Of a stretch of DNA of 64,000 nucleotides, positions 2,726 through 56,195 are shown piece after piece; the first letter of the stretch is position 1; every line of letters begins with the position of its first letter. Source of the stretch: Hydrolagus colliei (Eukaryota); assembly GCA_035084275.1 (NCBI GenBank), contig CM068757.1:9734001-9798000 (forward strand), written 5' to 3'. The position numbers and the translations under genes are program-made. The notes under the pieces are model-generated. The model did no database searches and had not been told where the DNA came from. It saw nothing but the letters and a program-made list of their open reading frames with translations.

Positions 2726-2734
2726 TTCTGAGAA
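2726..2734 (+). promoter_or_regulatory. GAS (STAT) element of gene 1
   Basis: TTCTGAGAA (TTCN3GAA) within TTTCTGAGAAA, 10 bp upstream of the ISRE; equivalent site kept in gene 2. Confidence 0.65.
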
Positions 2735-2744
2735 ATCATACACG

Positions 2745-2758
2745 AGTGAAAGTGAAAG
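2745..2758 (+). promoter_or_regulatory. ISRE/IRF-E of gene 1
   Basis: AGTGAAAGTGAAAG (GAAANNGAAA core) ~60 bp upstream of ATG; the same 14-mer precedes all four leader exons. Confidence 0.8.
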
Positions 2759-2819
2759 CACAGCCCCAGTCAGTGCGGCTGGAAGCTGGAGAGAGAGAGA
2801 GAGACACAGAGAGACAGAC

Positions 2820-2919
2820 ATGTTGAGGGGGACAAACTCGGCTATAATGTCCTCACCCGGTGGACCTGCCAGGGCGCTGACCCTCGTCCTGATCCTCGGG
2901 GCTTGGATTGCAGGATCAG
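2820..2919 (+). CDS. Gene 1 exon 1, signal peptide
   Basis: [33 protein letters not shown], hydrophobic core, donor CAG|GTACAG, phase 1. Confidence 0.8.
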
Positions 2920-5900
2920 GTACAGAAAATGCGCAAACGTTAGACTGATTTGCTGTCTCTCAGCGTGGGGAGGGGGAGGGGGTTAGGGGGAGTTGTGGGG
3001 GAGTCACAGCCTGAAGCGTTCTGTGTTTGGAGTTTAGCTGATAATATGAAACACTGTATGAAGAACCCAAAACGGTGTTTTGGGTTCTTTGGACTTGGAA
3101 CGATTAGATAATATTGAAGCAGAATATTATGAGTAGTAACCATACAGTGTATTTCATTAACACATTATATTCTTTCAATTCACTCACTCCTTGAACCCAT
3201 CCAATCAGGTTTCCGCCCTGTTCACAGCATGGAAACTGCCCTGGTCAAGGTCACTAATGACATCTTAACCGCCTGCGACCAGGGCTCCCTCTGCCTCCTC
3301 GTCCTCCTTGACCTGTCTGCTGCGTTCGACACAGTCGATCACACCATCCTCCTCCAACGTCTTTCCTGCCACCTCAACCTTCAAGGCACAGTCCTTGACT
3401 GGTTCCATTCCTACCTGACCCACCGCCTATACTTTGTATCTTCCAACGGTTCCTCACGGCGTCCCTCAGGGCTCTGTCCTCGGCCCCCTCCTTTTCACCA
3501 TTTATACGCTCCCTCTGGGCGATGTCATCCGCAAACACGGGGTAAATTTCCACATGTATGTGGACGACAACCAGCTGTAACTTTCTGCCTCATCCCTCAA
3601 CCCCCAGACCATCGTTGTTCTGACAGCATGTCTGTCCGACATCGAGTCCTGGACTCCGGTGTGGGAGAGAATACAAGCTGCAGGTTGTGAATGAATGGCT
3701 GCTTGAGGAGGGAAGAGTTGGGAAGCCGATGAGCAGGAATTTGGGGTTGTCCAATCTAAATGTAAATAAATGCATGGATGAGGAACTCAGTGGGTGGGGT
3801 GGGGGGAGTCAGGTGATTAGTACATGGAGGTAGGGTGCCATCGAGGGTGGAGGCAGAGAGATGGAGTTGGGTGTCATCTGCATACATTTGGAAGCTAACC
3901 CCGTGTAGATAACATCGTGGTGGGGTATGAGCAGCTTGGAGAGGTGGGGAGGGTCCAGGGCGGGAAGTAATTTGAAAGTGAGAAGGAGGATATTCTAATC
4001 AATCCATTCAGCAACAAGCAGCCAGTGAGGGCTTGCAGACACGGGAGTAATGGGGGTGCGGAGTCTCAAATACGTGAGGCACAGTCAGCAGAATTTTGAC
4101 ACAAGCCTCAACCCCTCATTCTCTGGATAACCTGTGGGGTACAATTCTATAGGCACTAGCTGTGCTCCAGTGCTCTGCCTAAATGGCCATTAATTGCAAA
4201 TGCACATGAGCATGCTGTTTAACATTCACTCCTTGGTATTGTCACCAAACCCTCGGGTAGGACTAGATTTTCTTGTTTCAATATTCTTGAAGCAGTAGCT
4301 CATCCCAACCTATGAATTTTAACCTGCTTCTAATCTCAGATAATCAAACCTGCTATTCTGGTGTTTAAAATGCTCAGTTGTCATCAATGTTTTGGAATGC
4401 CTCTTGTTTTTACACAGATGCTTTGGCGATGACAATATTTAAAGACCCATTGGAGGTCTTATTGAATGAAGATGTTGTCCTTCAATGTAACGTAACCCTC
4501 AAGACTCCGGAGGAGCCCAGCCTTGAAATAATTGCAGTTCGGTGGTTTTTGGGGTTGAAGGAAGTGTATGCATACAATGGAGGGATATTTAAAGCTATCA
4601 GAAACGGATCAAAGATAATAGTAGAAAATCTGCAAAGGGGAGATGCCTCACTACATCTTCCTAAGGTTCAGATATCTGAAGCAGGAGTGTACAAGTGTAT
4701 GGTTTACTTGATGCCGACCACATCACAAGAAGAAAAGAGTTCAACCTTAATCGTGTCAGGTAAGCACAGTAATCTTGCCATGTATGTGTGTGTTGTGTGT
4801 GTTGTGTTGCGGCTTGTAATGCTGTATTCAACAGATCACAAGATAAGTTGAGATGATTCGCCCACAAATATACAGTCAATTCACTTTACAGTATATTCTG
4901 TGAAGCGCTTTGGGACATCGATAAGATGTGAAAAGCGCTGTATCAAATACAATAATTATTATTCTTATGAAGATGGCTGTTCAGACCATCTGAGCTCAAG
5001 CAACCAGGAAACCCATCGTCACATCACTGCATCAAACTATTCCAGTGTGCTATCTTCAACCACCCTTCTGTAAGGGTCTGGTGCAATAGTCAGCAATGAA
5101 CAGCACACATTAAAAATTAAATAACACAAGTTTATTGCTTGGTAATAAGGGAAGTAAATTAAATAAGGACACAGACAAAATGCATCAAGATAAACAAACT
5201 TATTCTCTAAAATTAGTAACTAACTCATCTATTCCGCATACACGTACTGCTCCCACCCCGCAGTGTATGGATGCGTGAGTGTGTGAATATACTACTGGGT
5301 TCTGGGTGTCTGTCAATAATAATAATCCTTAAGTTTATATAACACTTTCCACGACTAATTGTTGCCTCAAAGCGCTTCACAGAATACACAACGTCCTAAG
5401 TTGGGACAGGAGCAGTGGGGGAAGGTTCGTGGTTGGGGGAAGGAAAGTAGGAAAATTAACCGCATTGACCGTTTGTGGGTGAAACGCGGCAGCCAAATTG
5501 CGCACAGCGGTGTCCCACAAACAGTCGTGGAAATGGAGCCAGGGGAGAAAGGGGGAAAAGAGGATAAGAGGGAGAGGGAGGCGAAGGTGGGGAACAGTCA
5601 GATAGGAAAAGGGGAGAGAAAGGTGGCAAGGGAGAGAGGGAGGGCAAGGTGGGTGGGGGGCAAAATCAGAGAGAAAGGGGGGCAAGAGGAAGAGGGAGAG
5701 AAGGGGTAAAGGGGGGAGAGAAAGTGGGGAAAGGGAGCAAGGGAAGAAGAAGGGGGGGGGTAGGCCGGGGCAGGGGGGATTAAACAACAACAATAAACAA
5801 CAAAATCAACAACAATAAACAACAAAAGCAATAATAGTAATAACAAAAATAATAACCATCAAAAATAGTCCAGAAGCACCACCTCAAGGTCCAGTTTCCC

Positions 5901-8900
5901 TCTGCTTGTAGATTTCCTTGACTCTTTGCTCTGCCCTGCTTGCCTTTTACTCAACTTCTGTATGTCTCTCTCTCTTGCCAAGCTGTGTTTTAGTTTTGTT
6001 GATTGGGCTGATATTCTGCTTGACAGTCAATCAAGGCTTCTCTCTTTCTCTGTCTCTCTCACTTTTGCCAGTTAACCCTTCACTGCTATTATCCAGGCTG
6101 CAGTACCTGGACAATAACAATTGTCCTGGCTGATCACACAACAGCTGGACTCTCTCAGCAGCTAGTCTGACATTTGGTGTTGGCTGACCACAAACAACCA
6201 GACCTCCCCTCTTCTGACTGTTGGCTCACTGCTCCACTGTGCACTATCCTCCTGCTAGCCTGACCTCTCACTCTCCTGCTGGTTCTCTTTCGTTCTTTTG
6301 ATTGTTGAAATGATTGTTGGTTCTTGGTTGATTGTTGAAATGATTGTGCCTTTACCCCTCAAACCTTCCTATCTTTGAACCGTTTTTGCAGCATCAGGAC
6401 AATAACCAGATTTCTCCTGTTAGTACTGGCCATGCACCCACAAGAATCTGTTTATTGATCTTTGTCCAAATCATTCTCAAACTCATTCAGTTTTAAAAAG
6501 AATGTGTATTCTTAATCATTGTCCCTTAGTACTCCATAAACCCTTGCACCTGACTAGGTCAGTTCAATCCACAACTGTTTGTGGGATACAGAGGGTTGGT
6601 GGATCGCTACTCGGGGCATTAATCCCATTACAAAAAATTCTAATAATAATTTAGTGCTGAACACGTCTTATCAATGTCTCAAAGCTCTTCATAGAATATA
6701 TTGTAAAGTGAATTGACTGTATATTTGTGGGCAAAATGCGGCAGCCAATTGCGCACAGCAGCGTCCCACAAACAGTCGTGGATTGAAATAACCAATTTTT
6801 ATTATTTTTTGATTGGTAATTTTGTCATTGGATTTGAGTTTCTACCTTGGCTTCTTTTACTAATTTCAACTTTAAACCTTTAACCTCTTGTTCTACCATC
6901 TTGGTGCATCATGTTTTACACATTTATGCACCATCTGAGAAATCTTCTCTCAAGACTGATGAGCCCTATCTCATTTTGGCTAAAAGTCCCATTTAATAAA
7001 CAACCCATCAGTCAGAGTGATTGTTATTAACCCCTCTGCTTAAGCAACCATTGATGCCATCTAAAATGGGTCAGATGAACTGGTAACCATGCATTGGTCT
7101 CCAACACACCTGTCCATTTCTATCTCGGTGAGATGCTTCATTTGGGGAAACATAGTTACCTCATTCTTCTGTTGACCTATAGTGATGTAAATTGTTTCGT
7201 TAACTTGCCAAGATTAGATGTATGTAGCTCACTGGTGTTAGTTCATAAATCTTGGGGTTGAAATTCAAATTAGTCTTAATTCATATGGTATTGTTGTTGT
7301 TGTTTGTTGTTGTTGTTGTGATGTTGTAAAATCTAAGTGTTGTGCAAAATTGTTGCATTGAATTAGAAAGCCATTACTTCTAAGAAATGGGAATCATTGA
7401 TTTTTTAAGGAATTTTTCTTAATTTTGTGCAATTCAAAGTTCCAGGGTAGACAAGGTGGAATTTCTGTCTGCCTGTTGCTGTGTCTGAAGTAAATACAAG
7501 TTGTATTATTATTGTCACTGGTGTGTATGTTGTGAGTAGCAAATAAAAGTGCTGCTTGAAAGACAATACTATATTCATGTAAAGAAATTTGATAACCTCT
7601 ACAGCTCAGCCAAACGTCACCTTGTCTCCACGTCACATCAATGTAATCAATGGTTCAGTAGAAGACTTGATGTGTGATGTCCATGAATTTTACCCTGAGA
7701 TGCACAAGATCAGCTGGGTCAAGGTATCGCATGGTGCGGAGATGCAAATTACAACAGGTATCTTGACACGAGATGTAGTTACCAACAAGGACAGCACGTT
7801 CAGTGTTTCCAGCAAGTTGACAATCAGACCAACCGTGGACGACAATGGTAATCAGTACAGGTGTGTGGTGCAGCACAGAACATTCAGTGATACTCTTACA
7901 CTGGAGACAGAGCTGACTGTGGTAATTGAGAATCCACAGGAACCTGCAGGATATGGACCTGGAGCTGTTATTGGAGGTGTAATCGGTGTTGTCCTGATGG
8001 TGATTGTGGTCTTTGTTTTAGCGGCACTTTACTTTTGGAAGAAAACGAAGCAAGGTAAGGATCTTCACAGCCCTAAACAACAACGGCAGACGTGGGGGTG
8101 ATTTATTATACACTAAATGTTCTTGTGCACATTTTCTATTAATAGAGAACAGTCAGCTGACACTTGATCAACTGAAATAGATATTATCCTAATGACAGGA
8201 AAAAGTTTGTGTCAAGGCCTCTGCTCTCTGGGACATTTACCCGAATCTTTTCTAAAGACTTACCTGCTTGATCGTGCTTTTGGTCACTAGCAGCATTCCC
8301 TGCTTCCTCTTGCCACCTCACTCAGTGATCCACACTGTAAAGTACTTGTAAAGTACTTTGAGATGACATCAAAAGATACTGCATGAGGGCAAATTGTTGT
8401 TATAACTGTGGTGATCATTACCCAGGTTTCTTGAGAGAATTAGAATATTTGATGCTACTTTTTGTATGTTCCACAGCTCCTCCCAAGATCAATGAAATCA
8501 GCAAACCCACTCGCTTTATACATGGGCAGCGTGTCGATCTGAGTTGGGAAGTGACTGGTTTCAAACCAAAAGAGATAGAGATCATGATATTACTGACGAG
8601 GAAAGGAAAACAGCCACTGGAGCTATTTGTCTGGAAATTCACAAAGAATAAAAATGAACCAGGTCAGGTTGAAGAAGGTTTTCATCTCCTGAAAACAAAA
8701 AATGGATCTGACGGGGATAATTCGTTCTCTGCTGACACCCCACAATGTGATCCGCTCAAAAAAGGGACCTTCGGGGTAAAGTGTCCCATAAGGTTCTGTC
8801 CTGATGTATCTGAGGACGATGGAGCTCAAATAACAATGCAAGTTCATCACAAGGCTCTGAAACAGCCTCTCAAAAAATCTGTAACTTTAGATGTTGAAGG

Positions 8901-11900
8901 TAAGATTTGCATTGTGCACCTCCCTACCTCCACCGAACCACACCCAAACAATGGCAAGAACTAAAAACATGGAAATCTGGGGTATTGATCCTTTCTAATA
9001 ACAAAAAACTAATAATTTGGTCAATCAATCCAGAATTACAGTGTGAAATTGGCTGCCGGGTTACGCCCATAAAATATGCAGTCAATACACTTTACAGTGT
9101 ATTCTGTTGAGTGCTTTGAGAAGTCTCAACAGTGGGATAAGGCGCGATATCAAACACAATAATTATTATTATAATTAGAGGAAACAAGGTTATTCACCCC
9201 ATCGAGCCTATACTGGTGGTCACTCATCCACTGGAGCTATCTCCCCGTATCCCAATTCTCTACTCTTCCCCCTTACCCAATGATGAGCTGCTTCAAAACC
9301 ACTGCAACATTGTTACTATGTGAGCTCCAAGAGTTACCTTATGCCCAGTAACCCTGTGTGGTCAGTTGACGGATTGACTCAGTTGGTGATGCTCTCTTCT
9401 ATGGGACAGAAGGTCATCAGTATTTCAATTGGCATCTGAAAACCTGCCCTTCACCTCTGGCTATATAGAAGCTACCATAATCTCTGTCACTCTTACTGTG
9501 TGTCACTCTCTCTTTCTTTCCCTCTCAGCTTCAGAGAGAGAAGAGAATAGATTGAGACGGGAAACAAAAGGGGAGAAAGAGAGAGAGAGAGACAGGGAGG
9601 GAGAAAGAAGAACACATAAAAACACAGACAGTTTGTGTTCATACAACTTTTATATTAACATGGAAGTTCTCAGACAATAATAGCCTTGCACATGACATAT
9701 CACCTGATCATGCCTTTGAGACTTCACAGAATAAACTGTAAACAGAGGAATGTGGAGTAAGGAAACTTGCACAATATTTCGCCTGCTGGAAATCGTACCC
9801 AGGTCTCTCGCTTATGAGCTACAGGACTCCACAGAATATACTGTAAAGCAGATTGATTGTGTAATTTGTGTGCGACGAGCAGCAGCCAATTGTGCACAGC
9901 AGTGTCGCACAAATAGTCATGGATTAAATGACCAATTTATTATTTAAAAATATTTTTGAAGCAATTATTATCCCTGAAATACAATCTGAGAATCTACTAA
10001 TAACCAGGTTCCTACATACAGATGGGTAAACAGAGGCGTGTGGATTAAGATTATTTAAGGCCCACCATTTCCAGGAATCAAACGAAACCTGAGGTTGAAG
10101 TATGAACGGAATCCAGGGGGTCAATGTGAGACCCCAGTGTGAGCCCCTAGATTGATTTTATGATTTGTAACTGGACACAGTGTGGCCAGTTGTAGAATTA
10201 CAGCATAATGTTAATAATGTTTGTGGAGTCCTGTAGCTCAGTGGTTAGAGCACTCGCCTTACAAGCGAGGGACTTGTGTTCAATTCAAGCATGGTGAAAC
10301 CTTGGGCAAGTTGCCTTGCTCCACATGCCTGATAATAATCCCTCAAAAAAAAATTGGTCATTTTAATCCACAATTATTTGTGGGGCACTGCTGTGCGCAA
10401 TTGGCTGCCACAATTCACCCACAGTTAATTCACTTTACAGTATATTATGTGCAGTGCTTTGAGATGTCTTGAAGACGTGAGAAGCGCTATATAAAACACA
10501 AGGATTATTAGTAATAACATGCTACTTGTGTTTTACAGCTCCTCCCACGATGACTGAAATCAACATACCCTCTGGTATTGTGCACGGTGTCAATGTGCCT
10601 CTGACATGGGAGGTTAATGGCTTCAACCCACGGGCCATTGTAATTGCTGTATTGGTGAAGAGGAAAGTGGATCAGGAAGCAAAGCAACTGTTTCATTGGC
10701 AGATCCCAGAGAAAGAAAAGCAGCCAATCCCACATGATATTACCCCAAGCATTGCTACACAAGTTAACTCCTTCACTGCTGAGGTGGCAACGATTGAAAA
10801 GACAGATAAAGGGACTTTCAGTGTGAAGTGCAGCATTGCCATGTGTGCTGATGTAATCAGGGATAATGATGCTGAATTCACTGTTGAAGTTAAACATCAG
10901 GCTCTGGATAATCCTCTCACTAAAGCTATAACATTATGTGTCGCAGGTAAATTCTACCTCTGTATTTTCTCTCTCTCTCTGGTGCTAATATGTGAGTTGA
11001 AGTGCAGCATGCTGCTGTGTGTGTCCCTCTATGCTGCAATAGTTATTTTTGTTTGTGACAGTGACGTTCTATCACATAGACATCTGTGCCGACAGCCACC
11101 CCCCTTCCCCTCTCTATCCAGGCTCAGTGGATGACTCTGTCACTTTAAATCGCTCAAACACATTAGCTGAAGTGAACAATGCCATATTAATGCATGTTGT
11201 TGCTGTTGTGTTTGGGGGCAGCTCTGTTGCAGGTTGATGGGGAGGTGATGGGCTCTGTGGTAACGGTCCAGCTCAACATCAGCCTGAAATCTCATCTGTT
11301 TTCTTGAGAAACTTAAACAAATCGATTTTGAGATCCTCAGACTTGCCTACAATTCACCTCTTGCTCTCACACCTCGCTACCTCTCCAATCTGCAAACACC
11401 CACTTGTCAACCCACTCCGTTCGCTTGCTCAAACCTTCTGCATCTTCCTTGACCTGTCCACGAAACTATCGGCAGCCAGGCATTCAACAACGATACCCTG
11501 AACCTCTGAAACTCCCTACCCCAAACTCCAGCTCGCCCTCCATCTCCATCAATCATTGGATCACAGCTGAAGGTTTACTCTCTGACCATGCCTACCATCA
11601 CCTCCCCTCTCTCCCCAGCTCAGTATCAAACTACAATATTGCGAAGCTCATCAAGACGTTACCCTGCATGAAAGTTGCTGTATTAAATGGAAGTTGCTAT
11701 TGTTGAAAGAGTGTGTAACTCTGTCTGAAGCCTTGCTGCAGATTCTCATTGTAAATTGTGTGTGAGGCTGTGTGGTGTGTCCTGTAACTGGATTTAATCT
11801 TTACATGATATTTGTGTTTGTGTTATAGCTCCTCCCGTAATTACTGAATGGCTGGCAACCCCTGATATGACACATGGTGCCACCTCCACTCTGAGTTGGG

Positions 11901-18179: not shown

Positions 18180-18490
18180 CCCATCAATCAAGACCCTCAA
18201 CTGTCCTTCCTACTCCACATCAGTGCCATGAACCGCTCTGCCTTCTCCCACCTCCTCAACATCGCCAGGCTTTGCCATTTCTTCACTCCTCAGGCCGGTG
18301 AAACCCCTCATTCACATGTACATCTTATCTAGGCTTGACTACGCCAATACCCTGTTTGTCGGCCTTCCGAACTCTTCCCTTCACAAGCTGCCGATCACAC
18401 AGAAACTCTGCAACCTGTGTCCTCTCCCTCACCAGGCTCTGTGACCCTATTGCCCTCATTCTCGCCAGGCTCCACAAAGGCACTATATCA
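18180..18490 (+). mobile_element. Degenerate L2 ORF2 3' fragment
   Basis: tctaggcttgactacgccaatacc (SRLDYAN)...gccaggctccac (ARLH), typical of the L2 C-terminus. Confidence 0.65.
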
Positions 18491-21403: not shown

Positions 21404-21489
21404 AAAAAAATGACGATAACTCGGGATCTGTGTTCGCAGCTTAAAGCTAATCTGCTGTGAATGCAATAATAGCGTTAAACACCATCCCT

Positions 21490-21498
21490 TTCCGAGAA
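21490..21498 (+). promoter_or_regulatory. GAS (STAT) element of gene 2
   Basis: TTCCGAGAA within TTTCCGAGAAA. Confidence 0.65.
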
Positions 21499-21510
21499 AT
21501 CATACACGAG

Positions 21511-21524
21511 AGTGAAAGTGAAAG
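21511..21524 (+). promoter_or_regulatory. ISRE/IRF-E of gene 2
   Basis: AGTGAAAGTGAAAG ~68 bp upstream of ATG. Confidence 0.8.
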
Positions 21525-21591
21525 CACAGCCCCAGTCAGTGCGGCTGGAAGCTGGAGAGAGAGAGAGAGACACACACACAGAGAGACAGAC

Positions 21592-34839: not shown

Positions 34840-34862
34840 AGTGAAAGTGAAAGGGTGATTTC
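34840..34862 (+). promoter_or_regulatory. ISRE plus abutting kB-like site of gene 3
   Basis: AGTGAAAGTGAAAG overlapping GGGTGATTTCC, ~80 bp upstream of ATG. The kB call is weaker than the ISRE call. Confidence 0.7.
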
Positions 34863-34932
34863 CATGTACAAGTAGTGGGATAATCAGAGCAAGTCATTTT
34901 ATTTAAAAAATCCTGCTTCTGTGGAGGGAAGG

Positions 34933-46900: not shown

Positions 46901-49900
46901 TAGAGCCCCCCTTTCACGTTGGGCGGACTTCCCAAGGCGCTGAACAGTTAGATCGGGACCCGAGCGGGGTGGTGGCGTTGGGGGAGGGGCAGAGTAGTGA
47001 CAATGGTGTAGGAATGGGGGGAGAGTTAGGCGGGCAGCAGAAGGCATGGTCGATGAGGAAGGTCTTGAGACCGGCCTTGAAGGAAAAATGGGAGGAAGCG
47101 AGGTGAAGTGATTGCGGGATGGAGTTCCAGAGTGTGGGGGCAGAGAGGCTGAAAGCCTGGCCACCGATGGTAGGGCGGTTTGGGCGGGGCACCATAGTCC
47201 GCCGAATGGAGAGGACATGTAGGTTGATAGGGAGACAGCAGGTCGGAGAGATAGGCGGGGGCAAGGCCGTGAATGGCCTTGAAGGTGAGGTTGTTGTTGG
47301 AATATAGGTTTGTGAGATCTTGTTTGAAGTATCAGTTCTGAAGCTTTATAGAATCCACTGATGTTGTTCTTGTTGCCTTTCATACTGGCTCTTGCGCTGT
47401 TTTCAATTATGACCTGTGCTTTCCATGTTCTTTCGATGCAATAGCAGCAAAGTCGAGAAGCTCTGAAACAACAGGAGAAAATATAGACGAAATCTCTGTT
47501 GCTGAAACTCAATCAGACAAAGACAAAGATTTGGAAATACGCAAGGAAGCTGGTGAGAAAGAGAATGATGAACCTGAAGAAATTGGTAAATATGTACAGA
47601 AAAATGAAAGTGAATTGAGTGGAATTATTGAATTATTGGAGCCAGTGGAGACGGGCGAGGGTGGGAGTGATGTGGTCGCGGAGCCTAGTGCGGGAGAGTA
47701 CACGAGCTGCAGACTTCTGAATAATCTTCAGAGAGGAGCTGGGAAGGCCGACGAGGAGAGAGGTCCCGTGGTCGAGCCTTGAGTTGATGAATGCGTGGAC
47801 GAATGTTTCAGGAATTATGACCTGTTTTCAATTATGACCTGTGCTTTCCGTGTTCTTTCGATGCAATAGCAGAAATGACACTTTCTGAATCAACAGGAAT
47901 AAATGGAGCAGATGGAAACCATGTTGCTCCAACTGAAGGAGAGAAAGGTTCAGGAAAACCTGAGAAAGTTGAAGAGAAAGAGAACGAGAATCCTTGCATT
48001 TGATATAGCACATATCACGTCTTCCCGTCATCTCAATGCGCTTCACAGAATATACTGTAAAGTGAACCGACTGTATATTTCTGGGATCAAGGATTGATTT
48101 CTGGCAGTGCAAAACCTTGGCAAGTTTCCCTGAGGTTGCTAATATACAGTCAATTCACTTTACAATATGTTCTGTGAATCCCTGAAGATGTCTAGAAGAT
48201 GTGAAAATCACCATATCAAATGCAAGGATTATTATTACTATACAGTATCAAAGATTGAAGGAGAGTCATTTTGTTTAATGCTACACCTGATATATTTGAG
48301 GCCAATTCATGAATGTAGATGGTGAAGAGTATTCAGCCTAAAACAGATAGCTGCAGAACACTGTTTGCTTCTCTCATCAGTCTGAAAGGCTGCCGTTCAC
48401 TCCTATTCTTTGATTTCTTGTTCCTGCTGCCTGTCACATTGGGTATACATTGTTTTCAAAGACCCTTGTTTTCCATGTTCTGTCAATGCATCAGGAAACA
48501 CGGTGATCCCTCAAGCCACTCAGAGAACAGGAGTAAGTGCAGTAGTTCCTGAAACTGATCCGAAAACTCAAGAAGCACCAAATCAGCAACCTGAAGAGAA
48601 AGTCAAAGGTGAATATAAAGGTGTTGGTGCAATTGGAAAGAATGAAGAATGCGAGTTGAGTGGAATGGTCTGAACTAATATAAAACATTAGATTGTACTG
48701 TACCCCAAACTGTGGAACTCCCTGCCTCAGCTCTCTGCCTTTCCTTGTCCATCTTCAACAACAACAATAAATTACACTTATAGAGCCCCCCTTTCACGTT
48801 GGGCGGACTTCCCAAGGCGCTGAACAGTTAGATCGGGACCCGAGCGGGGTGGTGGCGTTGGGGGAGGGGCAGAGTAGTGACAATGGTGTAGGAATGGGGG
48901 GAGAGTTAGGCGGGCAGCAGAAGGCATGGTCGATGAGGAAGGTCTTGAGACCGGCCTTGAAGGAAAAATGGGAGGAAGCGAGGTGAAGTGATTGCGGGAT
49001 GGAGTTCCAGAGTGTGGGGGCAGAGAGGCTGAAAGCCTGGCCACCGATGGTAGGGCGGTTTGGGCGGGGCACCATAGTCCGCCGAATGGAGAGGACATGT
49101 AGGTTGATAGGGAGACAGCAGGTCGGAGAGATAGGCGGGGGCAAGGCCGTGAATGGCCTTGAAGGTGAGGTTGTTGTTGGAATATAGGTTTGTGAGATCT
49201 TGTTTGAAGTATCAGTTCTGAAGCTTTATAGAATCCACTGATGTTGTTCTTGTTGCCTTTCATACTGGCTCTTGCGCTGTTTTCAATTATGACCTGTGCT
49301 TTCCATGTTCTTTCGATGCAATAGCAGCAAAGTCGAGAAGCTCTGAAACAACAGGAGAAAATATAGACGAAATCTCTGTTGCTGAAACTCAATCAGACAA
49401 AGACAAAGATTTGGAAATACGCAAGGAAGCTGGTGAGAAAGAGAATGATGAACCTGAAGAAATTGGTAAATATGTACAGAAAAATGAAAGTGAATTGAGT
49501 GGAATTATTGAATTATTGGAGCCAGTGGAGACGGGCGAGGGTGGGAGTGATGTGGTCGCGGAGCCTAGTGCGGGAGAGTACACGAGCTGCAGACATCTGA
49601 ATAATCTTCAGAGAGGAGCTGGGAAGGCCGACGAGGAGAGAGGTCCCGTGGTCGAGCCTTGAGTTGATGAATGCGTGGACGAATGTTTCAGGAATTATGA
49701 CCTGTTTTCAATTATGACCTGTGCTTTCCGTGTTCTTTCGATGCAATAGCAGAAATGACACTTTCTGAATCAACAGGAATAAATGGAGCAGATGGAAACC
49801 ATGTTGCTCCAACTGAAGGAGAGAAAGGTTCAGGAAAACCTGAGAAAGTTGAAGAGAAAGAGAACGAGAATCCTTGCATTTGATATAGCACATATCACGT

Positions 49901-52900
49901 CTTCCCGTCATCTCAATGCGCTTCACAGAATATACTGTAAAGTGAACCGACTGTATATTTCTGGGATCAAGGATTGATTTCTGGCAGTGCAAAACCTTGG
50001 CAAGTTTCCCTGAGGTTGCTAATATACAGTCAATTCACTTTACAATATGTTCTGTGAATCCCTGAAGATGTCTAGAAGATGTGAAAATCACCATATCAAA
50101 TGCAAGGATTATTATTACTATACAGTATCAAAGATTGAAGGAGCGTCATTTTGTTTAATGCTACACCTGATATATTTGAGGCCAATTCATGAATGTAGAT
50201 GGTGAAGAGTATTCAGCCTAAAACAGATAGCTGCAGAACACTGTTTGCTTCTCTCATCAGTCTGAAAGGCTGCCGTTCACTCCTATTCTTTGATTTCTTG
50301 TTCCTGCTGCCTGTCACATTGGGTATACATTGTTTTCAAAGACCCTTGTTTTCCATGTTCTGTCAATGCATCAGGAAACACGGTGATCCCTCAAGCCACT
50401 CAGAGAACAGGAGTAAGTGCAGTAGTTCCTGAAACTGATCCGAAAACTCAAGAAGCACCAAATCAGCAACCTGAAGAGAAAGTCAAAGGTGAATATAAAG
50501 GTGTTGGTGCAATTGGAAAGAATGAAGAATGCGAGTTGAGTGGAATGGTCTGAACTAATATAAAACATTAGATTGTACTGTACCCCAAACTGTGGAACTC
50601 CCTGCCTCAGCTTTCTGCCTTTCCTTGTCCATCTTCAACAACAACAATAAATTACACTTATAGAGCCCCTTTCACGTTGGGCGGACTTCCCAAGGCGCTG
50701 AACAGTTAGGTCGGGACCCGAGCGGGGTGGTGGCGTTGGGGGAGGGGCAGAGTAGTGACAATGGTGTAGGAATGGGGGGAGAGTTAGGCGGGCAGCAGAA
50801 GGCATGGTCGATGAGGAAGGTCTTGAGACCGGCCTTGAAGGAAAAATGGGAGGAAGCGAGGTGAAGTAATTGCGGGATGGAGTTCCAGAGTGTGGGGGCA
50901 GAGAGGCTGAAAGCCTGGCCACCGATGGTAGGGCGGTTTGGGCGGGGCACCATAGTCCGCCGAATGGAGAGGACATGTAGGTTGATAGGGAGACAGCAGG
51001 TCGGAGAGATAGGCGGGGGCAAGGCCGTGAATGGCCTTGAAGGTGAGGTTGTTGTTGGAATATAGGTTTGTGAGATCTTGTTTGAAGTATCAGTTCTGAA
51101 GCTTTATAGAATCCACTGATGTTGTTCTTGTTGCCTTTCATACTGGCTCTTGCGCTGTTTTCAATTATGACCTGTGCTTTCCATGTTCTTTCGATGCAAT
51201 AGCAGCAAAGTCGAGAAGCTCTGAAACAACAGGAGAAAATATAGACGAAATCTCTGTTGCTGAAACTCAATCAGACAAAGACAAAGATTTGGAAATACGC
51301 AAGGAAGCTGGTGAGAAAGAGAATGATGAACCTGAAGAAATTGGTAAATATGTACAGAAAAATGAAAGTGAATTGAGTGGAATTATTGAATTATTGGAGC
51401 CAGTGGAGACGGGCGAGGGTGGGAGTGATGTGGTCGCGGAGCCTAGTGCGGGAGAGTACACGAGCTGCAGACTTCTGAATAATCTTCAGAGAGGAGCTGG
51501 GAAGGCCGACGAGGAGAGAGGTCCCGTGGTCGAGCCTTGAGTTGATGAATGCGTGGACGAATGTTTCAGGAATTATGACCTGTTTTCAATTATGACCTGT
51601 GCTTTCCATGTTCTTTCGATGCAATAGCAGAAATGACACTTTCTGAATCAACAGGAATAAATGGAGCAGATGGAAACCATGTTGCTCCAACTGAAGGAGA
51701 GAAAGGTTCAGGAAAACCTGAGAAAGTTGAAGAGAAAGAGAACGAGAATCCTTGCATTTGATATAGCACATATCACGTCTTCCCGTCATCTCAATGCGCT
51801 TCACAGAATATACTGTAAAGTGAACTGACTGTATATTTCTGGGATCAAGGATTGATTTCTGGCAGTGCAAAACCTTGGCAAGTTTCCCTGAGGTTGCTAA
51901 TATACAGTCAATTCACTTTACAATATGTTCTGTGAATCCCTGAAGATGTCTAGAAGATGTGAAAATCATCATATCAAATGCAAGGATTATTATTACTATA
52001 CAGTATCAAAGATTGAAGGAGAGTCATTTTGTTTAATGCTACACCTGATATATTTGAGGCCAATTCATGAATGTAGATGGTGAAGAGTATTCAGCCTAAA
52101 ACAGATAGCTGCAGAACACTGTTTGCTTCTCTCATCAGTCTGAAAGGCTGCCGTTCACTCCTATTCTTTGATTTCTTGTTCCTGCTGCCTGTCACATTGG
52201 GTATACATTGTTTTCAAAGACCCTTGTTTTCCATGTTCTGTCAATGCATCAGGAAACACGGTGATCCCTCAAGCCACTCAGAGAACAGGAGTAAGTGCAG
52301 TAGTTCCTGAAACTGATCCGAAAACTCAAGAAGCACCAAATCAGCAACCTGAAGAGAAAGTCAAAGGTGAATATAAAGGTGTTGGTGCAATTGGAAAGAA
52401 TGAAGAATGCGAGTTGAGTGGAATGGTCTGAACTAATATAAAACATTAGATTGTACTGTACCCCAAACTGTGGAACTCCCTGCCTCAGCTCTCTGCCTTT
52501 CCTTGTCCATCTTCAACAACAACAATAAATTACACTTATAGAGCCCCTTTCACGTTGGGCGGACTTCCCAAGGCGCTGAACAGTTAGGTCGGGACCCGAG
52601 CGGGGTGGTGGCGTTGGGGGAGGGGCAGAGTAGTGACAATGGTGTAGGAATGGGGGGAGAGTTAGGCGGGCAGCAGAAGGCATGGTCGATGAGGAAGGTC
52701 TTGAGACCGGCCTTGAAGGAAAAATGGGAGGAAGCGAGGTGAAGTGATTGCGGGATGGAGTTCCAGAGTGTGGGGGCAGAGAGGCTGAAAGCCTGGCCAC
52801 CGATGGTAGGGCGGTTTGGGCGGGGCACCATAGTCCGCCGAATGGAGAGGACATGTAGGTTGATAGGGAGACAGCAGGTCGGAGAGATAGGCGGGGGCAA

Positions 52901-53379
52901 GGCCGTGAATGGCCTTGAAGGTGAGGTTGTTGTTGGAATATAGGTTTGTGAGATCTTGTTTGAAGTATCAGTTCTGAAGCTTTATAGAATCCACTGATGT
53001 TGTTCTTGTTGCCTTTCATACTGGCTCTTGCGCTGTTTTCAATTATGACCTGTGCTTTCCGTGTTCTTTCGATGCAATAGCAGCAAAGTCGAGAAGCTCT
53101 GAAACAACAGGAGAAAATATAGACGAAATCTCTGTTGCTGAAACTCAATCAGACAAAGACAAAGATTTGGAAATACGCAAGGAAGCTGGTGAGAAAGAGA
53201 ATGATGAACCTGAAGAAATTGGTAAATATGTACAGAAAAATGAAAGTGAATTGAATGGAATTATTGAAGGAAAAATTCCACCAGAGGAACAAATGAAGGA
53301 AAAAATGCAAATGACGGGGGAAAGTGTCGTCACAACTGACCAAGAAAACGTTAGGACTGAAGAAAGGAACAAATCTTAG
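34933..53379 (+). CDS. Gene 3: B7/NCR3LG1-like leader-V-C1-TM with long acidic multi-exon tail (up to ~990 aa if all tail exons are used)
   Basis: Exons 34933-34984, 36568-36906, 37752-38072, 38677-38781, 39375-39563, 40535-40648, 43056-43145, 43758-43913, 44689-44802; then repeated B/A/C exons 45990-46067, 46615-46728, 47445-47585 (again at +1880, +3760, +5638); terminal exon 53081-53379. Ectodomain is secure; tail exon usage is uncertain. Confidence 0.7.
36568..36906 (+). CDS. Gene 3 IgV exon
   Basis: VVLECKVSG...VTW...GDASLYLSNIQIEEEGDYTCSVIVTP; 339 nt, AG/GT. Confidence 0.92.
37325..37700 (+). mobile_element. Near full-length tRNA-derived Deu-type SINE; equivalent copy at ~58810-59170 in gene 4
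   Basis: tRNA-like head, tgtttgtgggacactgctgtg core, aggcgctatatctaatgcaagtattatta tail. Confidence 0.75.
37752..38072 (+). CDS. Gene 3 IgC1 exon
   Basis: VKCSATGFYPQELEIIW...DDTGSKYRCVVKH; 321 nt. Confidence 0.92.
38677..38781 (+). CDS. Gene 3 TM exon
   Basis: ECNNRNIGGFIGVIIALLVCVSLLIGFVTWDKRRK; donor G|GTAAGC; 105 nt. Confidence 0.85.
39375..39563 (+). CDS. Gene 3 first cytoplasmic exon with YETV motif
   Basis: GNNKKSKDEEE...FVSNIYETVPDS...PQTQK; 189 nt; donor G|GTAAGT. Confidence 0.8.
42855..43000 (-). mobile_element. Old CR1 RT fragment carried in the tail-exon intron cassette
   Basis: Minus strand reads EVSSVLRGSVLGQILFTIYIHAL (compare [25 protein letters not shown]); recurs near 44490, 46420, 48300, 50180, 52060. 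Confidence 0.55.
44951..45688 (-). mobile_element. Young 5'-truncated L2 LINE nested in an older L2 3' remnant
   Basis: DPELSFLP...AETFVHAFINSRLDHG...LHWLPIRQGIEYQML...HGLAPAYLS, 3' UTR and (CAA)n. Flanks ccatcttc / agatcgcacctgaag are contiguous in the uninterrupted copy at 43410-43560. Confidence 0.85.
45942..53268 (+). repeat. Tandem array, ~3.9 near-identical copies of a 1878-1880 bp unit, each with three tail exons, SINE pieces and a truncated L2
   Basis: Unit start ctgttttcaattatgacc at 45942, 47822, 49702, 51580; the ORF track repeats with the same period; only scattered substitutions between copies. Confidence 0.95.
53081..53379 (+). CDS. Gene 3 terminal exon
   Basis: (A)AKSRSSETTGENIDE...EERNKS*; the only copy of exon C not fused to L2; candidate AATAAA at 53753. 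Confidence 0.65.
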
Positions 53380-53863
53380 TGAAAAACTCTCTTCTTTCCC
53401 AAAAAATAAGCACAGAAATTGATCAATGCTCTCATCCTTTCCAATTATAAAAAAAACTTTTATTCAAGAATACTAATAGAATACTATAAATTTATGTACA
53501 TTATATATACAGTATATGTTAGATACAATTGAAAAGCATGACCTAAACCTTTCCAGATGAATTCACCTGATGCTGCATAATTCACAAAGTTTGTTTGTTG
53601 GATAATTGTTGGATAATCTGCATAATTCACAAAGCTTATTTGTTGGATCACATTTGTCTGTAAAACTAATCATGTACATGTAGCAATAACTACCATCAAG
53701 CACTGTCCAAGAAATGTTAATGTTGATTTTTTTTATTGCTTTTTTTATTTTCAATAAAGGCTTAAATATTGTGCTTTTCAGAGCAAGCTTGAAAATGAAT
53801 AGGGTTTATTATTAAATGTTGTGAATCTTATTTTTTCTTACTCTTTTCAGAAATTGTAGCATT

Positions 53864-54624
53864 ATAGAATCATAGAATTTTACGGCACAAAAGGAGGCCA
53901 TTCGGCCCATCTAGTCTGTGCCGGCTCTTTGAAAAGAGCGATTCAATCCCACTGCCCTGCCCGCTCCCCATAGCCTAATAGACCCGTTCTCCCTAAATAA
54001 AGATCTAATTCCCTTTTAAAAGTTGTTATCGAATCAGCCTCCACCACCTTTTCAGGCAATGCATTCCAGATTTGAACAACTCGCTGATTGAAAAAATTTC
54101 TCCTCAGCTCCCCTCTACTTCGCCTTGAAACTATTTTAAATCTGTGACCACGAGTCACAGATTCACCCACGAGTGGAAATAGTTTTTCTCTATTTGCCCT
54201 GTCGAAACCCCTCATGATCTTATAAACCTCTATTAGGTCTCCCCTCAATCTTCTCTGCTCCAGAGAGAATAACCCTAGCCTATCTAGCCTCTCCTCATAG
54301 CTGAAGTCCCTCAATCCTGGCACCATCCTAGTAAATCTTTGTTGTACCCTTTCCAATGCCTTCACATCCTTTCTGTAGTGTGGTGACCAGAATTGAACAC
54401 AGTATTCCAGCTGAGGCCTCACCAAAGTCCTATAGAGGTTAGTCAGCACTTCCTGACTTTTGCACTCTGTACCCCTATTTATAAAGCCTAGTATCCCATA
54501 TGCCTTCTTAACAGCCTTGTCTACCTGTCCTGCCACCTTCAACGAGTCACTAACACAAATCCCCAGGTCTCTCTGTTCCTTTACACCATTTAAAATTGTA
54601 CTATCTAGCCTATATTGCCTCCCT
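53864..54624 (-). mobile_element. CR1 LINE, 5'-truncated copy of the same family as 19105-21403
   Basis: 199 aa C-terminal ORF2 nearly identical to the 20700-21318 translation; tail ttctatgattcta on the minus strand. Confidence 0.92.
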
Positions 54625-54699
54625 GTAAAAACAAATTAGAATTTTTTTTACATCAACAAGAATTTGTATTTATATCTCACATAAGTACATGTGGTGGGA

Positions 54700-55760
54700 A
54701 GCTTTCCTTCTACATCCGTCCCATTCACAAGGACCCCTTTCCTCTACCTCTGTCAAATTGCCCTCCTCTTGCAGTACCTCAAACTCAACACAACTTAAAT
54801 CCTCATTCACACCTTTTCCTTATTTATATGCTTCTTCTCGGCAATGTTATCTATAGACATAGGATAAACTTTTGTATGTATGCGCAGATGATGCCTAAAT
54901 CTACTTATCCTCCAGCTGTGATTCTGTATCCACTGATGTTCTGTCAGCTTGTCTATCAGACATCAAGGCCTGGGTGAGGGCAAATTTCCTGCAGCTGAAT
55001 GGCGACAACAACAACAAAATTGCATATGTATAACGCCCTTCATGTCAGGAGGATATCCCAAGATGGTAACCACACTGCTTAGGTCCTATCAAAGTCTTGC
55101 CTCCTGTGGCTCTGGCCTGTTCAACCTCCCCACCTATCCCCCAAAACTTATTGAAACAGTATGTAACCGAGGTGTCAGGTTCGATCCCGAGCTTTCCTTC
55201 CCACCCCACAATCCCTAACAGGACCACTTTCCTCTACCTCCGTCACATTCCCTGCCTCCAACCCAACACAATCAAAATCCTCATTCACACCTTTGTCATC
55301 ATCTGCATTGACTATTCAAACTATTCAATCTATTCAAACTCCACACCCCCATCACAACAGTCCTCGCCAGGCAAGACTGGCTCCCAAGCACAGAACAGAT
55401 TGACCTCAAGATCCTCACACTCAGCTACAAATCACATTCATACTCTGGTATTTCTCTACCACTCAAACATGCTTATTCTCCATGCCACCACCTGCCAACT
55501 CTACTTGACTGGCACTGCATGCCCCTCGTACTCTCCATTCCACGATTGGTGCCATGCTTTCAGCAACACCAAAACTTTGGAAGTCTCTCGCAATCCCTCG
55601 GCCTAGCCCCCTCCTTCTCTATTTTTAGATTATTTCTTAATACAGTACTTTCCGCTTCGCCCATGTACATGGCCACCTATCTCCTCACCCCAGCTCAGCA
55701 TCAGGCTACGCCATTGTTCAGTCCTCCGAGATGCTAGCTTGCAAGAAGGTCATTATATAA
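54700..55760 (+). mobile_element. Heavily degenerate L2 LINE remnant
   Basis: gcagatgatgcc (ADD motif) near 54885; atcctcattcacacctttgtc...gactattcaaac (LIHTFV..DYSN); L2-like tail aatgcaagttgtt. Confidence 0.6.
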
Positions 55761-56087
55761 ATGCAAGTTGTTACTTTTGAGGTCACGTCACAAGGTTGAA
55801 TTGTTCCTGATTAAAACCTTTGGACTTGGATCAAAGCCAAGTTTCAACAATGCTTCATGTGGATCTTACTTTTGAGATTGATTACCCATATAGTAGAATG
55901 GAACAGTTGTTTTGCTTGGGGGGATGATATCAATCTGGTATATTTATCCCAGACACGGAATCAGCTGTACTAGTGTTTGAATTCTGTCCTGAGTAAGGTT
56001 TTTGATGTTAAATTTGCTTTCCTTTGAAATAATGGCTTTTGTTTTGTACAAAGCTATTCACCCTGTGATCCAAAAAGGGAGTGGAGC

Positions 56088-56110
56088 AGTGAAAGTGAAA
56101 GGGTGATTTC
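56088..56110 (+). promoter_or_regulatory. ISRE plus abutting kB-like site of gene 4
   Basis: AGTGAAAGTGAAAGGGTGATTTCC, identical to gene 3. Confidence 0.7.
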
Positions 56111-56195
56111 CATGTACAGGTGATCATCGCTAGGACTCTGGGATAATCGGAGCAAGTCATTTTATTAAGAAAATGCAGCTGTTGTGGAGGGAAGG

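What the first reader, a model, noticed from the sequence alone, without database searches (positions are those of the whole stretch)
2726..56110. Identical ISRE in all four promoters, paired with GAS in the Ig-tail genes and a kB-like site in the acidic-tail genes
Seen: AGTGAAAGTGAAAG at 2745, 21511, 34840 and 56088, each 60-95 bp before ATG, although the two gene pairs have unrelated leader exons and flanks. Genes 1/2 add TTCTGAGAA or TTCCGAGAA just upstream; genes 3/4 add GGGTGATTTCC immediately downstream. Established: GAAANNGAAA binds IRF1/IRF2/ISGF3, TTCN3GAA binds STAT dimers, GGGRNNYYCC-type sites bind NF-kB. Inference: an interferon-inducible cluster with two logics (STAT+IRF vs IRF+NF-kB), supporting an anti-pathogen role for the unusual tails.
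Basis: partly seen in the sequence, partly recalled or inferred. Interest (0 to 1): 0.7.

Follow-up and report, generated by a model that had tools for sequence, protein, structure and literature searches.

The report
Conserved IRF-binding element in B7-H6-like gene promoters
Four immune-type surface-protein genes of a chimaera-like fish carry the same interferon-regulatory-factor binding motif just upstream of their start codons. The motif is also found in relatives from elephant shark, sharks and a ray, so it is very probably a real, ancient but ordinary kind of promoter switch; the proposed NF-kB partner site is not supported.

Summary
AGTGAAAGTGAAAG occurs exactly four times, all on the + strand, 62-95 bp before the first ATG of four genes (0.11 expected by chance).

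The genes are B7-H6 (NCR3LG1)-like IgV-IgC1-TM genes of a holocephalan other than Callorhinchus milii.

G1/G2 and G3/G4 are each recently homogenised pairs, so the window holds only two independent promoter lineages. The 14-mer is the only block those two lineages share.

Comparative evidence is decisive. A sense-strand GAAANNGAAA lies 30-106 bp before the start codon in 12 of 13 informative family genes:
- the window (4);
- C. milii (4);
- stingray (2 perfect, plus one gene with only an imperfect copy);
- horn shark (1);
- sevengill shark (1).
In the sevengill shark relative of G3/G4, AGTGAAAGTGAAA is the only conserved block upstream of a recognisably similar leader.

The core GAAAGTGAAA is the published IRF-E bound by IRF1 and BLIMP1. 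It does not fit the extended ISGF3 consensus.

The GAS of G1/G2 is moderately supported: TTCCGAGAA is conserved in the C. milii ortholog.

The kB-like site is not supported. It misses the consensus, occurs at chance frequency and is absent from the shark relative.

Interferon inducibility remains an inference, because no start site or expression data were available. This is a new member of a known kind, of modest interest.

The parts
2745..2758 (+). IRF-E/ISRE-type element of gene G1 (AGTGAAAGTGAAAG; core GAAAGTGAAA at 2748-2757)
   Evidence: Exact match. It lies 72 bp before ATG 2820 and 99 bp before the conserved ATG 2847. In the C. milii ortholog the element reads GAAAATGAAAGT, with both GAAA half-sites kept.
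2726..2734 (+). GAS-type palindrome TTCTGAGAA of G1, 13 bp before the GAAA core
   Evidence: It is one of only four TTCYNRGAA sites in the 64 kb window. It is conserved as TTCCGAGAA in G2 and in C. milii.
21511..21524 (+). IRF-E/ISRE-type element of gene G2
   Evidence: Exact match. It lies within the 95.6% identical G1/G2 block 2690-2955 / 21454-21727.
21490..21498 (+). GAS-type palindrome TTCCGAGAA of G2, 15 bp before the GAAA core
   Evidence: TTTCCGAGAAATCA is identical in the C. milii G1 ortholog.
34840..34853 (+). IRF-E/ISRE-type element of gene G3
   Evidence: Exact match. It lies 90 bp before ATG 34933. AGTGAAAGTGAAA is the only conserved block upstream of the leader in the alignment with the Heptranchias perlo relative.
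34853..34863 (+). kB-like GGGTGATTTCC of G3 (not supported as an NF-kB site)
   Evidence: It misses GGGRNWYYCC by one base and such sites occur at chance frequency. It is not conserved in the shark relative.
56088..56101 (+). IRF-E/ISRE-type element of gene G4
   Evidence: Exact match. It lies 105 bp before ATG 56196. It sits inside a 38-bp run that is identical in G3.
56101..56111 (+). kB-like GGGTGATTTCC of G4 (not supported)
   Evidence: Same evidence as for G3.
2847..2919 (+). G1 leader exon (MSSPGG...AGS); an upstream in-frame ATG at 2820 is not conserved in C. milii
4418..8054 (+). G1 ectodomain exons: IgV 4418-4759, and IgC1 plus transmembrane segment 7605-8054
   Evidence: Pfam V-set and C1-set. 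Phase-1 splice sites. Best solved-structure relative is B7-H6, E 7e-23.
8477..15600 (+). G1 tail: five exons of about 140 aa after the transmembrane segment (8477-8899, 10539-10946, 11829-12242, 13218-13640, 15169-15600)
   Evidence: The predicted fold is a beta-sandwich with pLDDT 91.7, most like Ig V domains.
21619..30474 (+). G2: leader 21619-21691, no IgV exon, IgC1+TM 23428-23862, five tail exons 25198-30474
   Evidence: C. milii LOC103174897 has the same IgV-less architecture.
34933..53400 (+). G3: leader 34933-34984, IgV 36568-36906, IgC1 37752-38072, TM exon 38677-38781, cytoplasmic exon 39375-39563, then acidic exons including units of about 1.88 kb repeated from about 46.5 to 53.4 kb
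   Evidence: B7-H6 is the best solved-structure relative at E 4e-26, with B7-H3 close behind at E 3.5e-25.
56196..64000 (+). G4 (runs off the window): leader 56196-56247, IgV 58065-58403, IgC1 59218-59538, cytoplasmic exon 60834-61022, acidic exons

Best explanation
Each of the four genes carries, in its proximal 5' flank and on the sense strand, a tandem GAAA element (GAAAGTGAAAG). This is a binding site for dimers of interferon regulatory factors.

Its core is the IRF-E type, read by IRF1 and IRF2 and competitively by the repressor BLIMP1. It is not the extended ISGF3 type.

The element is an old, selectively maintained feature of a vertebrate family of B7-H6-like surface proteins. It most likely makes their transcription respond to interferon or virus signalling: IRF1 induced through STAT1, and possibly IRF3/IRF7 directly.

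In the G1/G2 promoter type a STAT-type GAS 13-15 bp upstream probably adds direct STAT1 input, giving an interferon-gamma-like GAS + IRF-E module.

What is shown: the motif, its position and orientation, its enrichment and its conservation. What is inferred: factor binding, promoter position relative to the true start site, and induction.
For: 1. Exact motif in all four genes; chance expectation 0.11. It is the only block shared by the two promoter lineages.

2. The coding regions of the lineages are only 39-48% identical in protein, so neutral promoter DNA should be randomised.

3. Family-wide recurrence on the sense strand just before the start codon:
- C. milii: -81 (GAAAGCGAAAGC), -77 (GAAAATGAAAGT), -47 (GAAAGCGAAACT), -99 (GTGAAAGTGAAAGG).
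- Hemitrygon: -80 (GAAAGTGAAACT), and GAAAGTGAAAGC 30 bp before the likely ATG.
- Heterodontus: -83 (GGTGAAAGTGAAAGT).
- Heptranchias: -86 (AAGTGAAAGTGAAAAT), before a G3/G4-like leader.

4. Background. There are 19 sense-strand matches outside 5' ends in about 304 kb (window, L001, L002, L003, L005). That gives about 0.007 expected per 110 bp.

5. Where the element changes, both GAAA half-sites are kept and the spacer and flanks vary.

6. GAAAGTGAAA is the published IRF-E under overlapping IRF1/BLIMP1 peaks at promoters of MHC class I pathway genes (PMC4497732). GAAANNGAAA is the canonical IRF dimer site (PMC6954429).

7. GAS: TTTCCGAGAAATCA is the longest exact run in a 64%-identical cross-species promoter alignment.

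8. A B7-family precedent exists: PD-L1 is driven by interferon-gamma-JAK-STAT-IRF1, with IRF1 binding its promoter (PMC6420824, abstract as listed).
Against: - No transcription start site, expression or binding data exist for any of these genes.
- In two stingray paralogs the element lies only about 30 bp before the likely ATG, so there it may be at or downstream of the start site.
- The window's element does not fit the ISGF3 consensus WBVGGAAANNGAAACT.
- Fewer than 1% of canonical ISRE sequences were occupied by IRF3 in one mammalian study, so a motif alone is weak evidence of occupancy.
- One stingray gene has only an imperfect copy, GAAGTGAAAGC.
- The gene lineages are paralogs, so the counts are not fully independent.
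- From memory, not checked here: human B7-H6 is not known as a classical interferon-stimulated gene.
Confidence: 0.6

Rival explanations
1. The element is a real IRF-family or BLIMP1 site, but it sets constitutive or cell-type-specific expression rather than interferon inducibility. Candidates are IRF2, IRF8 or IRF4 in leukocytes or epithelia, or repression by BLIMP1.
For: The core is the IRF-E type that IRF1/IRF2 and BLIMP1 share. It lacks the GAAACT 3' half and the GG 5' flank preferred by ISGF3/IRF9. In G3/G4 the sequence CAGTGAAAGTG also fits, from memory, the BLIMP1 consensus. Conservation shows function but does not show which factor binds.
Against: Two family members carry the ISGF3-preferred GAAANNGAAACT. 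The G1-type promoter pairs the element with a conserved GAS. [quoted passage not shown]
Confidence: 0.22
2. The element is a direct virus-response element of the PRDI type. It would be bound by IRF3/IRF7 after pattern recognition, so the genes are switched on in infected cells independently of interferon signalling.
For: AGTGAAAGTG is, from memory, the core of the interferon-beta PRDI element. ISRE motifs in fish IFIT promoters respond to IRF3/IRF7 as well as to interferon (PMC3688568).
Against: Nothing in the sequence separates this from IRF1 or ISGF3 use. The GAS in G1/G2 points to STAT input.
Confidence: 0.12
3. The shared 14-mer has no function. It would be a short (GTGAAA)n slippage product or a chance match, multiplied by duplication and gene conversion.
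For: G1/G2 and G3/G4 are each homogenised pairs. The motif is 2.3 copies of a hexamer. GAAAGTGAAA also occurs in a G3/G4 intron at 41706 and 63518.
Against: Position, strand and half-sites recur in at least seven promoter types that are otherwise unalignable, across holocephalans, sharks and a ray. The background is about 0.007 per 110 bp.
Confidence: 0.03
4. The motif lies inside the transcript (5' UTR) and acts after transcription, or it is a by-product of leader or UTR constraints.
For: In stingray the annotated coding sequence of one gene runs through the motif, and the likely ATG is only 30 bp downstream.
Against: In the other genes there is 47-106 bp between motif and ATG. The sequence between them is not conserved while the motif is. 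The motif is a textbook DNA-binding site.
Confidence: 0.03

Closest known systems
IRF-E (GAAAGTGAAA) in promoters of MHC class I pathway genes (Psmb8/9, Tap1/2, Tapbp, Erap1), bound by IRF1 and antagonised by BLIMP1 (PMC4497732)
   Same: Identical 10-base core, promoter-proximal position, and genes of the immune-recognition type. TAPBPR is also among the solved-structure relatives of the ectodomain.
   Different: Binding and induction are not shown here. The genes are B7-H6-like, not antigen-processing genes. No S-X-Y module was recognised by eye downstream of the element.
Interferon-gamma-JAK-STAT-IRF1 control of PD-L1/PD-L2 (B7 family) (PMC6420824)
   Same: A B7-family surface ligand with an IRF1-type site in its promoter and STAT input. 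The G1/G2 promoter has GAS + IRF-E.
   Different: A different B7 member, a different proposed role, and no experimental data here.
Canonical ISRE of interferon-stimulated genes, bound by ISGF3 (consensus WBVGGAAANNGAAACT; PMC6954429). ISREs in IFIT promoters of mammals, birds and zebrafish (PMC3688568)
   Same: GAAANNGAAA core in sense orientation, close to the start codon (the transcription start site is unmapped).
   Different: The window's four copies end in GAAAGC or GAAAGG, not GAAACT, and begin TGAAA, not GGAAA. Only two relatives (C. milii LOC103174895 and one stingray gene) have GAAANNGAAACT.
Enhancer A (NF-kB) + ISRE module of MHC class I promoters (from memory)
   Different: The kB-like sequence here misses the consensus, lies on the other side of the ISRE, and is not conserved in the shark relative.

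Membership tests
ISRE / IRF dimer site | Two GAAA half-sites separated by 2 bases (GAAANNGAAA) | tested here: met
   GAAAGTGAAA is present in all four promoters. The definition is taken from PMC6954429.
ISRE / IRF dimer site | Extended ISGF3 consensus WBVGGAAANNGAAACT (at least GAAANNGAAACT) | tested here: not met
   There is no GAAANNGAAACT anywhere in the window. The 3' flanks are GC or GG. Two relatives do have it.
IRF-E (IRF1/IRF2/BLIMP1 type) | Core GAAAGTGAAA, i.e. GAAAGT/C repeats | tested here: met
   Exact core. The motif is as given in PMC4497732.
ISRE / IRF-E as promoter element | Position close to the transcription start site | not testable with these tools
   No start-site data were available. 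As a proxy, the element lies 72-106 bp before the start codon in the window and 30-99 bp in relatives.
ISRE / IRF-E as promoter element | Evolutionary conservation beyond the neutral background | tested here: met
   The element is kept across otherwise unalignable promoters. It is also kept between a holocephalan and a sevengill shark, where the surrounding flank does not align.
ISRE / IRF-E as promoter element | IRF binding and induction by interferon or virus | not testable with these tools
   This needs EMSA or ChIP, reporter assays and expression data.
GAS (STAT dimer site) | Palindrome TTCNNNGAA | tested here: met
   Found at 2726 and 21490. TTCNNNGAA is common, at 37 sites per 64 kb. The stricter TTCYNRGAA is rare, with 4 sites of which 2 are these.
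GAS (STAT dimer site) | Conservation in the ortholog | tested here: met
   TTCCGAGAA is present in C. milii with the same 15-bp spacing as in G2. It sits in the longest exact run of a 64%-identical alignment, which is moderate support. No GAS was found within 400 bp upstream of the C. milii LOC121850342 gene or the second L002 gene, and only a distant one (TTCCGTGAA at -249) before LOC103174895. The stingray and shark promoters were not scanned for GAS.
NF-kB site | Fit to GGGRNWYYCC | tested here: not met
   The best register, GGTGATTTCC, has one mismatch. One-mismatch sites number 133 against 125.6 expected by chance.
NF-kB site | Conservation in a distant relative that keeps the neighbouring IRF element | tested here: not met
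   It is absent from the Heptranchias promoter. The G3/G4 identity carries little information.
B7-H6 (NCR3LG1)-like genes | Signal peptide, IgV, IgC1 and a single transmembrane segment | tested here: met
   G1, G3 and G4 meet this. G2 lacks the IgV exon, as does C. milii LOC103174897.
B7-H6 (NCR3LG1)-like genes | Closest sequence relative among characterised proteins is B7-H6 | tested here: inconclusive
   B7-H6 is the top solved-structure match: E 7e-23 for G1 and 4e-26 for G3. B7-H3 is close behind at 9e-20 and 3.5e-25. NCBI names the 422-aa C. milii protein XP_042197506.1 'NCR3LG1-like'; this appears to be the G1 ortholog by length and contig, but the identity was not verified. No tree was made.
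B7-H6 (NCR3LG1)-like genes | Binding to NKp30 | not testable with these tools
   This needs a binding assay.

The most novel reading that the evidence does not exclude
The IRF element marks an ancient family, predating the split of holocephalans and elasmobranchs, of interferon/IRF-controlled B7-H6-like surface proteins. Their cytoplasmic side carries arrays of Ig-fold domains and/or acidic repeats. That would be a so far uncharacterised 'induced-self' ligand or signalling system, still present in cartilaginous fishes, coelacanth and frogs, with an intracellular Ig-domain function that has no described counterpart.
Probability: 0.3. Interest if true: 0.7.

Novelty: new member of a known kind. 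Interest (0 to 1): 0.4.

Why it matters
If the element works as predicted, a whole uncharacterised family of B7-H6-like genes would be placed under interferon/IRF control. The family occurs in cartilaginous fishes, with relatives in coelacanth and frogs. That gives a concrete, testable handle on when and where these proteins are expressed, and so on what their unusual tails do. It would also show that an IRF-E has been kept at the same promoter position since the split between chimaeras and sharks. The regulatory principle itself (IRF-E with or without GAS in immune gene promoters) is textbook, so the finding extends known biology rather than changing it.

Tried and rejected
- A homolog search with the G3 model found nothing. 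A G3/G4 relative was reached only indirectly, through the tail-domain profile and a shark protein.
- Exact-product look-ups failed for P0001, P0002, P0003 and the coelacanth protein. One Heterodontus gene was too long to fetch.
- The frog locus starts inside the IgV exon and says nothing about its promoter.
- My attempt to rebuild the 422-aa C. milii product, so as to walk along the contig, gave no solution.
- Tandem Repeats Finder did not report the 1.88-kb units of G3, because its longest period is 500. They are seen as repeated ORFs and as blastn hits.
- Pfam and the solved-structure sequence search gave nothing for the tail domain.
- The Flajnik 2012 and Ohta 2015 papers on B7H6 evolution are not held.
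- I first doubted the GAS because TTCNNNGAA is common. The cross-species comparison raised it to moderate support.
- I considered the 38-bp perfect G3/G4 block as a footprint. I rejected that because about 20 equal or longer perfect runs occur elsewhere in the G3/G4 alignment, mostly in introns.
- I looked by eye for an MHC-type S-X-Y module and an Ets-IRF composite (GGAANNGAAA) next to the element and saw neither.

Full report
**1. Observation**

The 14-mer AGTGAAAGTGAAAG occurs exactly four times in the window, at 2745, 21511, 34840 and 56088. All copies are on the + strand. No further copy appears when one mismatch is allowed, and shuffles give 0.11 on average.

Each copy lies 62-95 bp before the first ATG of a gene. 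TTCTGAGAA (2726) and TTCCGAGAA (21490) lie just upstream in genes 1 and 2. GGGTGATTTCC follows directly in genes 3 and 4. The description is accurate.

**2. What the genes are**

The window is vertebrate DNA with phase-1 Ig-superfamily exons.

- G1 has a leader, an IgV exon, an exon holding IgC1 plus a transmembrane segment, and then five exons of about 140 aa each.
- G2 is the same but has no IgV exon.
- G3 and G4 have a different leader, IgV, IgC1, a separate transmembrane exon and then acidic exons. In G3 these include units of about 1.88 kb repeated four times.

The ectodomains are most similar to human B7-H6 (NCR3LG1) among solved structures: E 7e-23 for G1 and 4e-26 for G3. B7-H3 is close behind and TAPBPR further down.

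The word-indexed protein searches returned hits only in Callorhinchus milii, at 44-70% identity. The C. milii genomic loci are 73-89% identical in DNA to the window. The window therefore comes from another holocephalan.

NCBI names a 422-aa C. milii protein 'NCR3LG1-like'. By length and contig it appears to be the G1 ortholog called in L001, but I did not verify that.

**3. How independent are the four copies?**

Not fully. The G1/G2 promoter plus leader (2690-2955 versus 21454-21727) is 95.6% identical, yet the IgC1 domains of the two genes are only 44% identical in protein.

In C. milii the two corresponding genes also share an identical leader peptide. That leader is only about 58% identical to the window's by my own count. 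The 5' end is therefore being homogenised within each species.

G3 and G4 are 81% identical over the promoter and first intron and 88% overall. About 20 equal or longer perfect runs (38 bp or more) occur elsewhere in their alignment, mostly in introns. Identity between G3 and G4 therefore says little.

The window holds two independent promoter lineages. Between them the 14-mer is the only shared block, and blastn finds no other promoter homology. A shared word of 14 is beyond what the G3 promoter shares with 3000 random windows, where the maximum was 12. Because the coding exons of the two lineages are only 39-48% identical in protein, neutral flanking DNA should long since have been randomised.

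**4. Comparative test**

I built a profile of the tail domain, and it found 202 representative proteins. Those looked up come from sharks, rays, chimaera, coelacanth and frogs, and almost all are named 'uncharacterized'.

I fetched genomic loci for several of them. The table gives the sense-strand GAAANNGAAA nearest the start codon.

| Species and gene | Position before start codon | Sequence |
|---|---|---|
| C. milii LOC121850342 | -81 | GAAAGCGAAAGC, part of a palindromic GAAA cluster |
| C. milii G1 ortholog | -77 | GAAAATGAAAGT, with TTCCGAGAA at -101 |
| C. milii LOC103174895 | -47 | GAAAGCGAAACT |
| C. milii, next gene downstream | -99 | GTGAAAGTGAAAGG, followed by (GA)n as in G1 |
| Hemitrygon akajei, gene 1 | 30 bp before the likely ATG | GAAAGTGAAAGC |
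| Hemitrygon akajei, gene 2 | -80 | GAAAGTGAAACT |
| Hemitrygon akajei, gene 3 | -29 | GAAGTGAAAGC (imperfect) |
| Heterodontus francisci | -83 | GGTGAAAGTGAAAGT |
| Heptranchias perlo (acidic-tail protein) | -86 | AAGTGAAAGTGAAAAT |

The Heptranchias gene has the leader MKILFLSVVIVSFISLS, which resembles the G3/G4 leader. In the three-way alignment, AGTGAAAGTGAAA is the only conserved block upstream of that leader.

Outside 5' ends there are 19 sense-strand matches in about 304 kb of these loci. That is about 0.007 expected per 110 bp. Twelve of 13 informative genes have a perfect match, in at least seven promoter types that do not otherwise align. This is a strong footprint. It places the element before the split between holocephalans and elasmobranchs, or else implies repeated selection for it.

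**5. Which kind of element**

GAAANNGAAA is the canonical IRF dimer site. ISGF3 prefers WBVGGAAANNGAAACT (PMC6954429). The window's copies begin TGAAA and end GAAAGC or GAAAGG, so they do not fit the ISGF3 form.

The core GAAAGTGAAA is the IRF-E reported under overlapping IRF1 and BLIMP1 peaks at promoters of interferon-inducible MHC class I pathway genes (PMC4497732). Two relatives do carry GAAANNGAAACT.

The most likely readers are IRF1/IRF2-type factors, perhaps IRF3/7, with BLIMP1 as a possible antagonist. ISGF3 is less certain.

**6. The partner motifs**

*GAS.* TTCNNNGAA is common, at 37 sites in 64 kb. The stricter TTCYNRGAA has only four sites, and two of them are these. In the C. milii G1 ortholog, TTCCGAGAA is present with the same 15-bp spacing to the GAAA core as in G2. 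TTTCCGAGAAATCA is the longest exact run in a promoter alignment that is only 64% identical. I rate this as moderate support. No GAS lies within 400 bp upstream of the C. milii LOC121850342 gene or the second L002 gene, and LOC103174895 has only a distant one at -249. I did not scan the stingray and shark promoters for GAS.

*kB-like site.* GGGTGATTTCC does not fit GGGRNWYYCC. The best register has one mismatch, and such sites are at chance frequency: 133 against 125.6 expected. It is absent from the shark relative.

**7. Mechanism and limits**

The best reading is an IRF-E that makes these B7-H6-like genes respond to interferon or virus signalling, with direct STAT input in the G1/G2 type. A B7-family precedent is PD-L1, which is driven by interferon-gamma-JAK-STAT-IRF1 (PMC6420824). 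ISRE function is conserved in fish (PMC3688568).

The motif, its placement and its conservation are shown. Binding, the true start site and induction are inferred.

In two stingray paralogs the element sits about 30 bp before the likely ATG, so it may there lie at or after the start site. A motif alone predicts occupancy poorly.

**8. Context noticed**

The tail exons follow a hydrophobic segment and a basic stop-transfer stretch, so they should be cytoplasmic. They are predicted with high confidence (pLDDT 91.7) to form a beta-sandwich most like Ig V domains. One stingray protein has both an Ig-like tail domain and acidic repeats, so both tail types belong to one old family.

**9. Verdict**

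This is a real, conserved IRF-type promoter element in a new gene family. It is a known kind of element, and the interest is moderate. The tails and the family itself are the more unusual part.

Noticed in passing
window 8477-15600 and 25198-30474: The tail exons come after the transmembrane segment and a basic stretch, so they should be cytoplasmic. Even so they are predicted (pLDDT 91.7) to be Ig-like beta-sandwiches, with C1-like sequence motifs (WEVTGF.P..I.I and VEV.HEAL..PL) seen by eye. The domain has no Pfam match. Its profile finds 202 representative proteins; those looked up are from sharks, rays, chimaera, coelacanth and frogs, and almost all are 'uncharacterized'.
   Followed up: partly
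window 2690-2955 versus 21454-21727: The promoter plus leader of G1 and G2 is 95.6% identical, while their IgC1 domains are 44% identical in protein. The C. milii counterparts also share an identical leader, which differs from the window's. This points to ongoing gene conversion of the 5' end in both species.
   Followed up: partly
window 21692-23427: G2 has no IgV exon between the leader and the IgC1 exon. C. milii LOC103174897 has the same leader-IgC1 architecture, so this is a conserved form rather than a recent loss.
   Followed up: partly
window 2820 and 21592: The first in-frame ATG of G1 and G2 is not present in C. milii. The conserved start is the second ATG (2847, 21619), which puts the IRF element 99-106 bp upstream.
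   Followed up: yes
window about 46500-53400: Four units of about 1.88 kb (ORFs repeating at 46506, 48386, 50266 and 52144) carry acidic exons of G3 together with repeat-like ORFs on the minus strand. Tandem Repeats Finder cannot see this period.
   Followed up: no
window 41706-41715 and 63518-63527: A further GAAAGTGAAA on the sense strand lies in a G3/G4 intron, inside a 49-bp run identical between the two genes. It could be an intronic IRF site or just recent homogenisation.
   Followed up: no
window 38880-38889, 38978-38987; 60343-60352, 60442-60451: Perfect NF-kB consensus sites (GGGATTTTCC and GGGGTATCCC) lie about 100 bp apart in the intron after the transmembrane exon of G3 and G4, within an unusually well conserved stretch (38.0-39.6 kb). 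If NF-kB input exists, this is a better candidate than the promoter sequence.
   Followed up: no
window 19256-21397 (+) and 53864-54624 (-): A LINE with a reverse-transcriptase ORF ends about 170 bp before the G2 start codon, so the G2 promoter shared with G1 is very short. A 97% identical inverted fragment lies upstream of G4, which suggests a recently active element.
   Followed up: partly
window 56173-56202: G4 has a short upstream ORF (ATG at 56173, ending at a TGA that overlaps the main ATG). G3 does not have it.
   Followed up: no
window 39464-39638: The longest perfect G3/G4 run (175 bp) covers the end of a cytoplasmic exon encoding ...SNIYETVPDSG... and 75 bp of the following intron. 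The YETV sequence is a possible tyrosine-based signalling motif.
   Followed up: no
L005 (Hemitrygon akajei), protein P0179: One stingray family member combines an Ig-like tail domain with long acidic repeats, so the two tail types of the window are linked in one protein.
   Followed up: no
L001 9890-9931 (C. milii LOC121850342 promoter): The IRF element here is part of a palindrome (CTTTCGCTTTGAGCGAAAGCGAAAG), giving GAAA repeats on both strands. GATTTCC follows 14 bp downstream, and the same heptamer follows the element in G3/G4.
   Followed up: no
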